This document shows, in pieces, positions 18,601 through 51,600 of a stretch of 64,000 nt of DNA. Each line of letters starts with the position of its first letter. The stretch's first letter is position 1. A program made the translations under genes and the position numbers. The stretch is taken from NCBI RefSeq assembly GCF_040938485.1, contig NW_027271046.1:992001-1056000 (forward strand). Direction: 5' to 3'. The notes under the pieces are model-generated. The model was not told the origin of the DNA. It searched no databases and saw only the letters and a list, made by a program, of their open reading frames with translations. The DNA comes from Diadema antillarum (taxonomy: Eukaryota).

Positions 18601-21600
18601 GCCGGCCTATTTTATCTCGTTTACACTTCTGAAATATCCCGGCTTTTTATTTCCTTTTATTGATTCACAATATCATGTCATTGTGCAAAAATTGTTATTG
18701 ATTATGCATCATACCTCGTTAAAAGTTCAACATACATTCGCTCTGCAGCATTTTAGAGGACGATGCGATGATGACAAATTGTAATCACTGGAAGCGAGGT
18801 TGTGCTCCTAGCACGACCTTCATGGGAGATTGTTTACTTTTTGTCACGTGTGTGGATGTGGTGACCGATTATTCTTATCTTCGGTGGTGATTAACCGCAG
18901 CCGATGAAGTGTCACCGTCGACGGACTGGACGGAGTGTAGTGTAAAGTAGTCTTGGTAGTAGCGAACCAATATCCAATACGAGTTGTCCGAAAATGACGA
19001 AATTAATTTGTACAGCGCTAGTCCTTCTAACTTGTCTGTTTAATGTCGAAACTCTTCAACCTTTTGTTATCATGGAGCAGATAATCTGGGAGTCGGGAGG
19101 TCCAGAAGATGTCGCAGCTTATCGCATTCCCCTCTTAATCCAAGTGCCTACTGGAGACCTGCTGGCATTCAGCGAAGCTCGAAAATACAGCACCCGGGAC
19201 TCCGGGGCGAAGTTCATCGCGATGCGCCGCTCAAGTAACGGTGGTGACTCGTGGGGACCCAACACGTTCATCCTCAATAATTACAACGTTCCCGATGGTA
19301 CAAATCTCGGAACTATCACAGTTGATCGGTTAAACAACCGACTCATTCTTATCCACACATTCTGTATTCATTCAGCCACTGTCTGTGTGAACGGAACTGG
19401 TGAGAAACCGGCAGGTATATACATGATCACCAGTCCAGACTGGGGATATTCGTGGTCCGAACCGGTTTATCTCGCAGATGGAAACCCCCTGTTGAAAAAT
19501 CTTCATTACAACCCGGGTCCAGGTTATGGTATCCAGAAGATGTATGAACCTCATAAAGGAAGACTTGTCACGTGTGGACAAGGTCGTTATTCCTTGTTTT
19601 GTCTGACCAGTGATGGTAAGTTAAGTCAAATGCGAACCGGGGTATGGGTAGAGATGAGAATTGAGCTTTCAACTTTTTGCAAGATACTAAGAAACCACTT
19701 ATAATGAAATGTTACAGAGCATACAATTCTAAGACTGATATTCAAAGTTTATTTGATGAATATCAGTTGTGAAATGGCTGAGATATCCAAAAACAAAGTA
19801 AAACAAAGCGATCCTAATAGAAGATGGGTCCCACCCTTTGTACCTGATCACCTTGTTTTGGATATCTCAGCCATTTCAAAACCAATTTTCATCAATTTTC
19901 ATCCTAAGTAAGAGGTTTCTCATTATCTCACAAAAAAGAGAAGAAGTCAGAAACCTGAAGCCAGGTCTCAACCAAAACTACCATCTGTCTGGCAATACTT
20001 GCAAACTATATATGGGGTGGGGTAGGGGTCATAAACATTGATGCAAAAATCTGGCATGTTTGCTGTTGCTGCAACTGCAACTTAGTACTAATTAAGCAAT
20101 GCTTCAAATAAAATCACATCCGTGCTTCCAAGGGTTAATCCGTGCTCAGAGTATAAAACAATAATGTCAAATTAGGGAGGTACAAATGTAGAGAGTCGCC
20201 TCCCTGGTCAAATGTGTAGATACATATGTACATGTCAATGTTGAATATATCAGGCTATGGTTTTTCCCCTTGGGCATACAAAAGTGTATATACTTTCAAG
20301 CCAAATTGAATATGCAGTACCTCTTATTTGCGCTACATGTACACTACACGTTCCCACTATCCCTCGTAGTAATTATTGTGTGGACTCTACCATACATGAC
20401 AGAATCTAGAGGAGTTGAATGATTGATTGAACAAGATGTAGATTATACAGTGTAACATTGGGACCTTATCACTTTATCGTGTCGTGTGATATTGCTTAGT
20501 CACTCTCAAACCTTCAGGCTTGAAATGTAGATGATTGATGAAATTGTCTTCTTTCTGCCATTGCTATTTAGATAATGGTACAACATGGCAGATGACCCCT
20601 GGACTAATGAAGATTCCATACCAGCTCTCTTCAATGAAGACTGGGGATTTTGAGCCAGGTGAAGTGCAGGTAATTCAAGGAGAGTTTACCTTAAAAAAAA
20701 AAATCATGTTTGGCAGGGAAAGCAGCAATAACAACAGATGCTCAAGAGCTTTCTGAAAGTTAGCAAGATATAAAAACGTAATATAATGGTCATGAAATTT
20801 CATGTGTTATGACTACCTTGGTAATTTTTTTTCCGTTGTATGTGAAATGACACTTCAGTTTTTCTTGAAAGAAACATTTGACTATTGACTATTTTGATGA
20901 TAATTTTCCAAGTCACTATGTTTTGACATCACCTTGCAACAAAGTCAATATCTTCACAAAAAAAAAAAAAAATTTATAAAAAAGGAGGCAATTTCTCTTT
21001 GTGAATGATATATCTAGGGGACCATACAAAATTATGAATGGACTATTAAAAGGTAGTGGCTTTGTTACTGAGTGTATTTGCTCAGATTCAAATTGATATG
21101 CTGGTATTGTGATAGCCATTCAGAATACAGTATACTGTATACATACACTTCTATACAAAGACAGACTGCATTATCTGCTTGAAGTCAAGATGCATTGTTT
21201 TTTTTCTGTCAAAGGTCATTGAACTGAAGAATGGGACACTCCTGATCAATGCGCGGAACCAGATGTCATTCCATTGCCACTGCCGCATCCAGGCTCTAAG
21301 CTTTGATGGTGGCGAGACGTTCCCCCTCCCTTACGTCACCCTGAAGGAGGAGCTGATAGATCCCAGGGTGTGCGGCTCGTTGCTCCCTTTCGGTGACATC
21401 CTCTTCTTCAGCAACCCTTTCAACCCAAGCCAGAGGGTCAACCTGACTCTCCACTGGAGTGTGGACTCGGGGGAGACGTACCCCAACTTTCTAACACTCT
21501 ATGAGAAGAGTAGTGGGTACTCTTGTCTGTCCACCATTGATGAGAACCACATCGGTCTTGTGTATGAGAAAGATGATTTGAAGTACATTTCATTTCTCAA

Positions 21601-48600: not shown

Positions 48601-51600
48601 ATGGCATTAGGTGAGGGCTTCAAAACTTCTACACAGAATTTTGACCTTTGACTTCTTTGACCTTTGACCTTGATTTTTGACCTGTATCGTACATTTTGCT
48701 ACAAAATGCTACTCCTTCGCCATTTCTAACCCGATTTCGATTCCGTATGCTTTATGTAATGGCACTAGGTGAGGGCTTCAAAACTTCTACACAGAATTTT
48801 GACCTTTGACTTCTTTGACCTTTGACCTTGATTTTTTGACCTATATTGTACATTTTGCTACAAAATGCTACTCCTTCGCCATTTCTAACCCGATTTCGAT
48901 TCCGTTTGCTTTATGTGATGGCACTAGGTGAGGGCTTCAACACTTCTACACAGAATTTTGACCTTTGACTTCTTTGACCTTTGACCTTGATTTTTTGACC
49001 TTTATTGTACATTTTGCTACAAAATGCTACTCCTTCGCCATTTCTAACCCGATTTCAATTCCGTTTGCTTTATGTGATGGCACTAGGTGAGGACTTCAAA
49101 ACTTCTACACAGAATTTTGACCTTTGACTTCTTTGACCTTTGACCTTGATTTTTGACCTATATCGTACATTTTGCTACAAAATGCTACTCCTTCGCCATT
49201 TCTAACCCGATTTCGATTCCGTTTGCTTTATGTGATGGCACTAGGTGAGGGCTTCAAAACTTCTACACAGAATTTTGACCTTTGACTTCTTTGACCTTTG
49301 ACCTTGATTTTTGACCTATATTGTACATTTTGCTACTAAATGCTACTTCCGGCGGGGACATATATTACGCACCGCGTAATTTCTACTTTTCCTTGTTACT
49401 TTGTCATCTTCGATTAATCATTATTCGGGTGGGCAAGTGATATTGCACGTGTTGCATACAAATTATATGCACTTTTTGCTAATTAAAAGTCGACCTGTGC
49501 GCACCAGGCAATATGGAACAAATTTACTGAACCATTGTTAAATGCACATGTTGTGTACAGCATCAGTATAGATACTGCATCCGACTTTATATACGGAGAA
49601 CATAACAATGTGGATTCAAGATCGCATCATTTTGAGAGCCACGGGTTATACCACGCACATGCTACGACATATAAAAGGCTGTGTAGTTCAAACCCTCTCC
49701 TGATTTTACACGAGGTGATGATATGCTGAGTATTATAATCATACACTTTTCCCAACAGATCACGGCGAAACATGGCACCTGAACAACCCCCTCTTCGTCA
49801 TACCCTACAAACAATCACGGACTGCCGGCGACTTCAAACCTGACGAAACCCAGGTTAGTGTACATTTTTTGACACATTGCAATCTGTAAGATGGTTCATT
49901 TTTCTTTTCATAGCGATTTCGACGGCAACTGAAGAAAGTGAATGAATTACAGATCATAATCTACGAGGTAATTGAAGACTTTATCAGCATATAACCTTCA
50001 GTATCCTGCAAAAGATCTTCATGAATGTAGTCTGGTTTCCAGACCCTTTGCCAACTGGACTCCTTTTACAAAATGCGCCCTCCGCGGCGACGAAGTCGCC
50101 GCCTTTGCCGAATCCATCTAAACCTGCTCCAGTTTTCGACGTTGTCGGCGTCAATATCCTGTATAGCAAAATAGTGCGAGCAGAGGGTGTGGAAGCCAGA
50201 CTATCATGAATGATGCGTAGAACAATAAATTACAGATTAAGTCATAAATTAAAAACATATGAAATTCTAGAAAGGTAAAGCGCCATATATGGACCAATCA
50301 AAGGATTGATTTCAGTTTCTCAGCACTGTCAGAGAAAAATTATCGAGTCTCATTTTCCCCCCATCCGTCACAGATCATTGAACTGAACAACGGAAACATC
50401 TTCGCCACAATTCGAAACCAGGAGCGCTTCCATTGTCACTGTCGACTCCAGGGTCTCAGTGTCGACGGCGGGATTACCTTTCCGATCCAGAACGTTACGG
50501 CCGAGGGGTCCCTTCTCGACCCATCCGTTTTCGCCTCGCTCGCTCTCGTCAACGACACCCTCTTCCTCTCCCACCCGTACAACTCCGAAAAGCGCGTCGA
50601 CATGACACTCCAGTGGAGCCTGGACTACGGAAAGACCTGGCCCCATCGGTTCCAGGTCTTCAACGGGTCCAGCGAGTACTCCTCCCTGACGCAGATCGAC
50701 GAGAACAACCTGGGACTACTGTTCGAGCGCAGCGACTACGAGTACATCGAATTTTACAAAATTCGCCTCAATTAATTGCCTCAGTGTCGTTCTTGCCACC
50801 GTCATCTGTTATACTGCATTAGATATCACGTGCACACTAAAGTGTATAGTGTTGGCGAAAACATCAGACCAATGCAGTCTTTTCTTCAAAGGTAGGTGAA
50901 GGACTTATGACTTGGAATCGTACGACAAGTGGCTGGTCGTCAGGAATAACCTTTTTTTATGAAGTTATGCAAAAAAGAAAAACATTTAATATTATTAGAG
51001 AATCAGTGTATCAGTATACTTTACATGATGTTTTGCTTGCTGAACATCTGTGCATCAGATGTCATTGCTTTGCTATGCAGTAGAATAACTACCGGTATCA
51101 TCACTTCTTCTTCTTTCTTTCTTTCTTTCTTTTTTTTTTTTGGGGGGGGGGGGGCGGTATCATGGTATTAAAGGTTACCAACGCATCGTATATCCATGGA
51201 GCTATTCAGCAAACGCAACATCCAGTGTTAATGGACGTTAAAAGCTATCATTACATAATTACATAGTTATCTACTAGATGGGTATATATATATAAAGTTA
51301 ACTGCAGACCATAAAACAGTTGTGGAAGTATCGTGGTTTTCTCGTATCAATGAGAAGCCCAGGGTTCGAGGCCTCACACGGCACTTATCCTCGAGACGAG
51401 ATCATTATGCACAACTCACCTCTCTACCAAATGTGTAATCACGTAATAGTCGGTGCGTGGCGTTGTAATATGTTTACAGATATTGTGGTTGGATTTATCA
51501 TGGTGGTGTTATTATGCTGGGCAGAATTGCAGTCTATCAAGCTGTCTGAAATGTTAATTTCCAGGGTATGCAGGGAGGGAAGTGAGTAAAACATTGTGAA

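What the first reader, a model, noticed from the sequence alone, without database searches (positions are those of the whole stretch)
18994..50775. Four-member tandem NEU1-type sialidase array with regular ~9-kb spacing and 2+2 structure
Seen: starts at 18994, 27613, 37323 and 46079 (gaps 8.6, 9.7, 8.8 kb), all on the plus strand with the same two introns (phase 1 in SD|D, phase 0 after E-x-Q) and signal peptides. A and B share RIP, E-A-R and the C-terminus IQLNL; C and D share RTP, A-P-R and [22 protein letters not shown]. The catalytic set (three Arg, acid/base Asp, Glu, Tyr nucleophile) is kept in all four. None ends in a YxxΦ motif like human NEU1's YGTL. Established: humans have one NEU1, and echinoderms are known for chemically diverse sialic acids. 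Inference: an old duplication gave two classes that each duplicated again, possibly forming a secreted or digestive/immune sialidase panel rather than one lysosomal housekeeping enzyme.
Basis: partly seen in the sequence, partly recalled or inferred. Interest (0 to 1): 0.75.

Follow-up and report, generated by a model that had tools for sequence, protein, structure and literature searches.

The report
Four tandem NEU1-like sialidase genes
A sea urchin (Diadema antillarum) carries four neighbouring, apparently working copies of a NEU1-like sialic-acid-cleaving enzyme; the row is real and shared with other sea urchins, but multiple NEU1 copies in urchins were already published and these genes are already annotated.

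Summary
The window is Diadema antillarum contig JBFRCO010000158.1, positions 992001-1056000. Four plus-strand NEU1-type (GH33) sialidase genes lie at the stated starts. Each has three coding exons and the same two introns.

- **Already annotated.** A, B and D match RefSeq "sialidase-1-like" proteins exactly.
- **Copy C.** Contigs from three read sets lack that G, and one is a correctly spliced transcript. The frameshift is therefore most likely an assembly error.
- **Constraint.** All four are under purifying selection against D. setosum (dN/dS 0.04-0.16) and keep the six catalytic residues.
- **Age.** The same order occurs in D. setosum. An A-B-CD row with identical intron positions occurs in Lytechinus pictus, so the array is old. 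The 2+2 history is supported.
- **Not the NEU1 ortholog.** The genes belong to an echinoderm/hemichordate-only NEU1-derived clade. A fifth, six-exon canonical NEU1 lies on another contig.
- **Tail motif.** The missing YxxΦ tail is normal for non-chordates.
- **Prior knowledge.** Four NEU1 copies in sea urchins were published in 2012.

The secreted/immune "panel" idea is untested. Other scan notes on this topic cover this same stretch, not other DNA.

The parts
18994..21619 (+). Sialidase A, 374 aa; coding exons 18994-19615, 20572-20669, 21215-21619
   Evidence: The exon translations are 100% identical to RefSeq XP_071489526 (P0129). Splice sites were read. The best PDB match is NEU1 8du5 at E 7e-39. 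dN/dS against D. setosum is 0.07.
27613..31441 (+). Sialidase B, 377 aa; coding exons 27613-28249, 29651-29742, 31037-31441
   Evidence: The exon translations are 100% identical to XP_071489528 (P0128). Pfam BNR_2 and BNR_3 match. dN/dS is 0.04.
35795..35826 (+). 3' end of a non-coding first exon of gene C. It extends several hundred bases upstream; the start is not mapped. Donor GT is at 35827.
   Evidence: The spliced contig of run X3 has 406 letters before the joint at 37267. Its last 30 letters match 35795-35824 uniquely.
37269..39493 (+). Sialidase C, 380 aa from the conserved ATG at 37323. Exons 37269-37966, 38366-38460, 39089-39493. An extra upstream in-frame ATG at 37278 is specific to D. 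antillarum.
   Evidence: Both introns are confirmed by GT..AG joints in a contig at depth 80. The ATG at 37278 reads ATA in D. setosum. dN/dS is 0.16. The orthologs C' (P0133) and D. setosum C (P0122) are intact.
37780..37784 (+). Run of five G in exon 1 of C. One G too many shifts the frame and gives TAG at 37788. Most likely an assembly consensus error.
   Evidence: The run and the stop were read directly. Contigs of runs X1, X2 and X3 (three samples, two studies) all lack one letter here. They also lack one letter at 38084 and 38164. The second copy in the contig has four G.
46079..50775 (+). Sialidase D, 372 aa; coding exons 46079-46700, 49759-49853, 50374-50775
   Evidence: The exon translations are 100% identical to XP_071489529 (P0131). 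The AlphaFold2 model has pLDDT 93.6, and its best structural match is murine NEU1 (TM 0.86). dN/dS is 0.09.
47550..49347 (.). 158-bp tandem repeat, 11.4 copies, inside intron 1 of D. It accounts for the long intron.
   Evidence: Tandem Repeats Finder gave the array. It is absent from the second copy D'.
11367..11696 (-). Open frame holding the ABCC-type transporter exon (end of NBD1 and linker). It marks the lower edge of the host intron, at about 11.7 kb.
   Evidence: In the protein this exon follows directly on the exon within 57534-57776. It is conserved upstream of A in D. setosum. The gene model is 1476 aa and spans the locus.
57534..58201 (-). Two open frames holding the ABCC-type transporter NBD1 exons (Walker A, signature, Walker B). 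They mark the upper edge of the host intron, at about 57.5 kb.
   Evidence: Pfam ABC_tran matches at E 1e-6 and 1e-8. The motifs were read.

Best explanation
These are four real, intact and conserved genes for NEU1-like GH33 exo-alpha-sialidases. They form an old tandem array, A-B-C-D, in the sea urchin Diadema antillarum.

**What each gene encodes (inferred from sequence and model).** Each product is about 372-380 residues. It has an N-terminal signal-peptide-like segment followed by a six-bladed beta-propeller. By homology, three arginines hold the sialic-acid carboxylate. A Tyr/Glu pair forms the covalent intermediate, and an Asp on a loop acts as acid/base. This is the retaining mechanism described for NEU1.

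**How the array arose.** It came from tandem duplication of one member of a NEU1-derived subfamily found only in echinoderms and hemichordates. That subfamily has three coding exons and no chordate-type C-terminal tail. The first duplication gave the AB and CD classes, and each class then duplicated again. A/B split before the Diadema-Lytechinus divergence; C/D probably did too.

**Relation to canonical NEU1.** A separate canonical six-exon NEU1 ortholog lies on another contig. The array genes are therefore extra luminal or secreted sialidases. They have most likely diverged in substrate or in place of expression. The CD class has changed two conserved motifs next to catalytic residues (RIP to RTP, E-A-R to A-P-R).

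**Shown:** gene structure, conservation, purifying selection, fold, catalytic residues, and transcription and splicing of C.

**Inferred:** enzymatic activity, secretory routing and any division of labour among the copies.
For: - **Gene models and identity to RefSeq proteins:**
- **NEU1 is the closest solved relative:** E 7e-39 for exon 1 of A and 1e-68 for D, against about 1e-5 for NEU2.
- **Fold:** the D model has pLDDT 93.6 and matches 8du5 at TM 0.86, rmsd 2.2 Å.
- **Conserved residues:** the six catalytic residues are invariant in 40 homologs. The six Cys of the three NEU1 disulfides are kept in all four copies and invariant or nearly so across homologs (residue roles from PMC10198634).
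- **Purifying selection:** dN/dS is 0.04-0.16 at dS 0.10-0.19. Introns are only 76-94% identical.
- **Copy C:** a spliced transcript contig has an intact frame.
- **Conserved order and structure:** D. setosum has the same order, and L. pictus has a three-gene row with the same intron positions.
- **Trees:** AB 100/99, CD 100/100, ambulacrarian-only clade 100/100. The fifth gene P0142 falls outside that clade.
- **Canonical NEU1:** P0142 has six coding exons, and its intron 4 is at the same place as array intron 2.
Against: - No enzymatic, localisation or tissue data exist here.
- Transcription was seen only for C. Run X3 is labelled 'DNA?', so reading it as RNA rests on exon depth 73-95 against intron depth 3-6 and on the spliced joints.
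- Logan contigs cannot exclude a minority five-G allele of C.
- The CD class lacks the Glu of E-x-R that 122 of 132 NEU1-like proteins keep. Reduced or altered activity is therefore possible.
- The timing of the C/D duplication and of the AB/CD split relative to holothurians is not resolved (AU p = 0.09 and 0.40).
- Signal peptides were judged by eye and by hydropathy only.
Confidence: 0.8

Rival explanations
1. Copy C is a pseudogene: the extra G at 37780-37784 is real and only three members work.
For: The window as assembled has the frameshift and an early stop. NCBI called no protein-coding gene at this copy (gene list of L002).
Against: - Contigs from three runs (three samples, two studies) all have four G. 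X2 carries the window-type A at 37658 and still has four G.
- Two further single-base excesses nearby (38084, 38164) are also absent from all three runs. That is the pattern of long-read consensus errors.
- The transcript contig is in frame.
- C' and D. setosum C are intact.
- dN/dS is 0.16.
Confidence: 0.08
2. One reading: the four enzymes are a secreted digestive or immune sialidase panel with different specificities for echinoderm sialic acids, not lysosomal enzymes.
For: - All four have signal-peptide-like N-termini and several N-glycosylation sequons.
- A separate canonical NEU1 exists that could do the lysosomal job.
- The four copies have been kept under constraint for a long time.
- The CD class has altered conserved motifs.
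Against: - There is no evidence on secretion, tissue or substrate.
- A signal peptide is equally expected for a lysosomal enzyme.
- The missing YxxΦ tail is the normal state outside chordates. PMC10198634 itself questions that motif's role.
Confidence: 0.2
3. The CD class has lost ordinary sialidase activity and acts as a sialic-acid-binding protein or as an enzyme with a different reaction.
For: A-P-R in place of E-A-R is found only in the echinoid CD class among 132 NEU1-like proteins. RTP is found in 12 of the 132. Both changes sit next to conserved active-site arginines.
Against: - All six catalytic residues and the disulfide cysteines are kept.
- The fold model is confident and closest to NEU1.
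- Purifying selection acts on both C and D.
- Holothurian and hemichordate homologs also carry RTP, and hemichordate ones lack the Glu too.
Confidence: 0.12
4. The repeated genes are an assembly artefact (false duplicates).
For: The same 1.15-Mb contig does hold a second, collinear copy of the whole array about 600 kb away. It is 81-99% identical and looks like an uncollapsed haplotype.
Against: - Within the window the four genes are only 44-65% identical in protein.
- Each has its own ortholog in D. setosum, on a chromosome-level record.
- L. pictus has the same kind of row.

The artefact question applies to the second array, not to the four members.
Confidence: 0.01

Closest known systems
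Vertebrate NEU1 (lysosomal sialidase-1; murine structure 8DU5)
   Same: - It is the best sequence and structure match.
- It shares the six-bladed propeller, the Arg triad, Asp acid/base and the Tyr/Glu pair.
- It shares the three disulfide cysteine pairs, the Asp boxes and an N-terminal signal sequence.
- It shares the intron after the catalytic Glu motif.
   Different: - Protein identity is 36-45%.
- The array genes have three coding exons, not six.
- They have no C-terminal extension or YxxΦ.
- They have a 6-7 residue insert between the first Cys pair.
- They sit in an ambulacrarian-only clade rather than being orthologs.
- Dependence on cathepsin A is unknown.
The four NEU1 copies reported in Strongylocentrotus purpuratus and Paracentrotus lividus (Giacopuzzi et al. 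2012, PMC3431349)
   Same: This is the same phenomenon: several NEU1-like genes in sea urchins, with catalytic residues conserved and the chordate tail signal absent. A P. lividus entry (P0002) falls in the B group.
   Different: That paper could not evaluate synteny for invertebrates. The tandem order, the AB/CD classes, the three-exon structure and the distinction from a canonical six-exon ortholog are additions made here. I did not map its four copies one-to-one onto A-D plus P0142.
Canonical NEU1 ortholog of the same genome (P0142, 381 aa, contig JBFRCO010001184.1)
   Same: It belongs to the same family and has the same catalytic residues. It shares the intron after D-E-C-Q with array intron 2.
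   Different: - It has six coding exons, RIP and E-A-R.
- It has no Cys-loop insert and has a vertebrate-like tail ending SGQL.
- It groups with crinoid, amphioxus and vertebrate NEU1, outside the array's clade.
- It is 42-44% identical to A-D.
Tandem NEU3 duplicates of teleosts, amphibians and reptiles (as reported in PMC3431349)
   Same: These are also tandemly duplicated animal sialidase genes.
   Different: They belong to a different subgroup (membrane-associated NEU3, no signal peptide), occur in different lineages and arose independently.

Membership tests
GH33 exo-alpha-sialidases | Six-bladed beta-propeller catalytic domain | tested here: met
   The AlphaFold2 model of D has pLDDT 93.6 and pTM 0.90. 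Its top PDB match is murine NEU1 (TM 0.86/0.87), followed by bacterial sialidases and NEU2. A-C align over their full length.
GH33 exo-alpha-sialidases | Arginine triad, Tyr/Glu nucleophile pair and Asp acid/base | tested here: met
   All six are invariant columns in 13- and 40-sequence alignments. They align to murine R72, R274, R335, Y364, E258 and D97. Residue roles are taken from PMC10198634.
GH33 exo-alpha-sialidases | (F/Y)RIP motif | tested here: inconclusive
   A and B have YRIP. C and D have YRTP, so the Arg is kept and Ile becomes Thr. RTP occurs in 12 of 132 NEU1-like proteins, including holothurian and hemichordate ones.
GH33 exo-alpha-sialidases | Asp-box (BNR) repeats | tested here: met
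   Pfam BNR_2 and BNR_3 match all copies and BNR matches C and D, though several exon-level scores fall below the curated cut-offs. The S-x-D-x-G-x-T-W type motifs are visible. Intron 1 lies inside one of them.
GH33 exo-alpha-sialidases | Sialidase activity | not testable with these tools
   This needs recombinant protein and sialoside substrates.
NEU1 subgroup (versus NEU2-5) | Closest to NEU1 in sequence and structure; signal sequence; three NEU1 disulfides | tested here: met
   - E-values against NEU1 are 7e-39 to 1e-68, against about 1e-5 for NEU2.
- TM is 0.86 to NEU1 and 0.71-0.74 to NEU2.
- The Cys pairs are conserved (PMC10198634).
- The N-termini are hydrophobic.
Direct orthologs of vertebrate NEU1 | Orthologous placement in the tree and the canonical six-exon structure | tested here: not met
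   A-D lie in a 100/100 clade of echinoderm and hemichordate sequences only. The canonical position is taken by P0142, which has six coding exons. A-D have three coding exons.
Direct orthologs of vertebrate NEU1 | C-terminal Y(-4)/YxxΦ signal | tested here: not met
   It is absent in A-D and in all ambulacrarian homologs aligned. It is reported as chordate-only in PMC3431349.
Direct orthologs of vertebrate NEU1 | Activation by cathepsin A (PPCA) | not testable with these tools
   This needs co-expression and activity assays.

The most novel reading that the evidence does not exclude
Sea urchins keep two kinds of NEU1. One is the canonical six-exon gene. The other is an ambulacrarian-only, three-exon subfamily that echinoids expanded into a fixed four-gene array. 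In that array the CD class carries RTP and A-P-R next to active-site arginines. On this reading, the CD class has evolved a different substrate preference for echinoderm-specific sialic acids or linkages, such as sulfated, methylated or O-acetylated forms or unusual oligosialic linkages.
Probability: 0.25. Interest if true: 0.5.

Novelty: new member of a known kind. Interest (0 to 1): 0.3.

Why it matters
Echinoderms make unusually varied sialic acids, and little is known about the enzymes that remove them.

This work adds three things:
- The extra urchin NEU1 copies form one conserved, ordered array.
- They fall into two classes.
- They are distinct from the canonical NEU1.

That gives a clean set of five genes for expression and substrate studies. 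It also corrects the simple picture of "four co-orthologs of NEU1".

The result is still an ordinary gene-family expansion. The copy number was published in 2012 and the genes are annotated in RefSeq, so the surprise for a specialist is small.

A practical point also follows. This assembly has single-base consensus errors that create false frameshifts, and it probably contains an uncollapsed second haplotype. That matters for other findings on this genome.

Tried and rejected
- **Assembly duplicates within the window:** rejected, because the copies are only 44-65% identical.
- **C as a pseudogene:** examined closely and judged unlikely.
- **A recent Diadema-specific expansion:** rejected for A/B, because Lytechinus has orthologs in the same order. 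It is not excluded for C/D (AU p = 0.09).
- **YxxΦ absence as a sign of secretion:** rejected. It is the normal non-chordate state.
- **RTP as unique to C and D:** rejected.
- **Look-ups that found nothing:** P0123 and P0010 (L. pictus) were not on record. I could not see what follows the third L. pictus gene or whether a C ortholog exists there.
- **Reads:** only one gene could be laid on reads, and only contigs were available. Expression of A, B and D and allele counts at 37780 could not be obtained.
- **Joined protein for C:** Database proteins identical to the spliced models (P0129, P0128, P0131) or orthologous to C (P0133, P0122) were used for full-length work.
- **Large representative-protein search:** not used, because the word search and family scans settled the family.

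
Full report
**Source and observation.** The window is Diadema antillarum, assembly GCA_040938485.1, contig JBFRCO010000158.1, positions 992001-1056000.

ORF listing and my own splice-site reading show four plus-strand genes. Each has three coding exons:

| Gene | Exon 1 | Exon 2 | Exon 3 |
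|---|---|---|---|
| A | 18994-19615 | 20572-20669 | 21215-21619 |
| B | 27613-28249 | 29651-29742 | 31037-31441 |
| C | 37323-37966 | 38366-38460 | 39089-39493 |
| D | 46079-46700 | 49759-49853 | 50374-50775 |

- Intron 1 is phase 1 and splits the Asp codon of S-D|D in an Asp box.
- Intron 2 is phase 0, after E-x-Q.
- A tblastn scan finds these four copies and no others in the window.
- The exon translations of A, B and D are 100% identical to RefSeq "sialidase-1-like" proteins XP_071489526, XP_071489528 and XP_071489529.

**The flaw in copy C.** A run of five G at 37780-37784 shifts the frame and gives a stop at 37788. NCBI called no protein gene there.

I laid contigs of four public runs on 37000-39700.
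- Three runs from three samples and two studies all lack one letter at 37780. They also lack one letter at 38084 and at 38164.
- A true SNP at 37658 segregates among these runs, and X2 carries the window-type base there yet has four G.
- Run X3 holds a contig at depth 80. It joins 37966 to 38366 and 38460 to 39089 with GT..AG ends, exactly the predicted introns, and it has four G.
- In X3, exon depth is 73-95 and intron depth is 3-6. The run therefore behaves as RNA although it is labelled "DNA?".
- That contig also shows a non-coding first exon ending at 35826.
- The second copy of C in the same contig and the D. setosum ortholog are both in frame.

I conclude that the extra G is most likely a consensus error and that C is transcribed, spliced and intact. 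Contigs cannot exclude a minority allele.

The in-frame ATG at 37278, which RefSeq uses for the sister copy, is ATA in D. setosum.

**What the genes encode.**
- Pfam gives BNR_2 and BNR_3 for all copies.
- The best solved relative is murine NEU1 (8du5), at E 7e-39 for exon 1 of A and 1e-68 for D. NEU2 scores about 1e-5.
- An AlphaFold2 model of D has pLDDT 93.6 and pTM 0.90. It matches 8du5 at TM 0.86 and rmsd 2.2 Å, ahead of bacterial sialidases and NEU2.
- The Arg triad, the acid/base Asp and the Tyr/Glu pair align to murine R72, R274, R335, D97, Y364 and E258. They are invariant in 40 homologs (roles from PMC10198634).
- The six cysteines of the three NEU1 disulfides are kept in all four copies (PMC10198634).
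- The N-termini are short and hydrophobic, as for signal peptides. I judged this by hydropathy and by eye only.

**Are all four under constraint?** I compared each gene exon by exon with D. setosum.

| Gene | dN/dS |
|---|---|
| A | 0.07 |
| B | 0.04 |
| C | 0.16 |
| D | 0.09 |

dS is 0.10-0.19, and introns are only 76-94% identical. All four are under purifying selection.

**Age and history.**
- D. setosum has the same row on a chromosome-level record: a TMEM-like gene on the opposite strand, then A, B, C, D.
- Lytechinus pictus has a row of three (377, 389 and 378 aa). Spacing is 9-10 kb and the two intron positions are the same.
- Trees give an echinoid AB clade (100/99) and a CD clade (100/100). 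The A clade includes Lytechinus at 100/100. The Lytechinus 378-aa protein is sister to Diadema D at 93-95/89.
- AU tests do not reject a Diadema-only C/D duplication (p = 0.09) or monophyly of all echinoid copies (p = 0.40).

The 2+2 history is supported. A/B is older than the Diadema-Lytechinus split, and C/D probably is as well.

**Relation to NEU1 proper.** A search with C found a fifth D. antillarum NEU1-like protein on another contig (P0142, 381 aa).

In a 44-sequence tree, A-D lie inside a 100/100 clade that holds only echinoderm and hemichordate sequences. P0142 lies outside it, with a crinoid copy, amphioxus and vertebrate NEU1.

P0142 differs from A-D in several ways:
- It has six coding exons, the canonical NEU1 number given in PMC3431349.
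- It has RIP and E-A-R, no Cys-loop insert, and a vertebrate-like tail.
- Its intron after D-E-C-Q is at the same place and phase as array intron 2. The array's intron 1 has no counterpart.

The array genes are thus members of a NEU1-derived ambulacrarian subfamily. They are not direct co-orthologs of the single vertebrate gene.

I counted motifs in 132 NEU1-like proteins.

| Motif | Count | Where the variants occur |
|---|---|---|
| RIP | 118 | |
| RTP | 12 | eight echinoid CD-class, plus holothurian, hemichordate and one other |
| RVP | 2 | |
| E-A-R or E-G-R | 122 | |
| A-P-R | 8 | echinoid CD class only |
| G-A-R | 2 | hemichordates |

- A-P-R is a class signature, while RTP is not unique.
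- From my own recollection of the NEU2-DANA structure, the Arg of E-x-R lies near the sialic acid O4. I did not test this, and the tools give no coordinates.
- The missing YxxΦ tail is shared by every ambulacrarian homolog aligned. PMC3431349 states that the Y(-4) signal is retained only in Chordata. It therefore carries no information about localisation.

**Surroundings.**
- The whole array lies antisense inside one intron, about 45.9 kb long, of an ABCC-type transporter gene. A TMEM60/TMEM185-family ORF at 16958-17455 (minus strand, PF10269) lies in the same intron.
- The intron splits NBD1. The Walker A to Walker B exons are at 57534-58201, and the next exon is at 11367-11696. The ABC exon is also upstream of A in D. 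setosum.
- This agrees with another first-stage note on the same stretch.
- The same contig holds a second, collinear copy of the ABC gene and the array about 600 kb away (about 409-443 kb). It is 81-99% identical with indels.
- The contig is 1.15 Mb, and D. setosum has only four proteins in these clusters. The second copy is therefore probably an uncollapsed haplotype. This was not tested.

**Known or new.**
- PMC3431349 (2012) reported four NEU1 copies in S. purpuratus and P. lividus. It noted that invertebrate synteny could not be assessed.
- RefSeq annotates these very genes.
- What is added here: the tandem order and its conservation, the AB/CD classes, the three-exon structure, the separate canonical ortholog, and the repair of the apparent frameshift in C.
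- The secreted/digestive/immune panel idea remains untested.

I rate this a new member of a known kind, of modest interest.

**Limits.**
- Expression was checked only for C, and only with contigs.
Exon pieces by reference and identical or orthologous database proteins were used instead.

Noticed in passing
window 11697-57533, minus strand host gene: The four sialidase genes and a small TMEM gene sit antisense inside one intron of about 45.9 kb in an ABCC/MRP-type ABC transporter gene (1476 aa model). The intron splits NBD1 between the Walker B exon and the following exon. TMD2 and NBD2 exons lie at 3395-10489.
   Followed up: partly
window 16958-17455, minus strand: A 166-codon open frame matches Pfam Tmemb_185A (PF10269, E 2e-11). 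A 129-aa product of the same family is annotated at the same place in D. setosum. It is probably a TMEM60/TMEM185-family gene, about 1.5 kb upstream of sialidase A on the other strand.
   Followed up: partly
window 47550-49347 and 52347-53192: A 158-bp tandem repeat (11.4 copies, 96% matches) fills most of intron 1 of D. The same unit occurs in inverted orientation (5.4 copies) downstream of D. The intronic array is missing from the second copy D' in the same contig.
   Followed up: partly
L001 and L003 (same contig, about 399.5-443.5 kb): A second, collinear ABC gene plus A' B' C' D' array lies about 600 kb from the window on a 1.15-Mb contig. It is 81-99% identical, and D. setosum has only one array, so it is probably an uncollapsed haplotype. 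B' exon 2 is only 88.6% identical with 9 gap positions. The RefSeq B' model (P0127) lacks a proper exon 2, and the A' model (P0130) has an unrelated N-terminus.
   Followed up: partly
window 37780, 38084, 38164: Three single-base excesses in the assembly are absent from read-derived contigs of three runs. This suggests unpolished indel errors in this assembly, so other apparent frameshifts in this genome deserve the same check.
   Followed up: yes
L007 3001-9683 (contig JBFRCO010001184.1): A fifth NEU1-like gene has six coding exons, RIP, E-A-R and a vertebrate-like C-terminal tail. It is the likely canonical NEU1 ortholog of D. antillarum.
   Followed up: yes
window 35733-35826 and 37278: Gene C has a non-coding first exon that contains a short upstream ORF (ATG at 35733). 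D. antillarum also has an extra in-frame ATG at 37278, 45 bases before the conserved start; it reads ATA in D. setosum.
   Followed up: partly
window 7987-8253: The only N run in the window (267 N) lies between ABC transporter TMD2 exons. It was left as it is.
   Followed up: no
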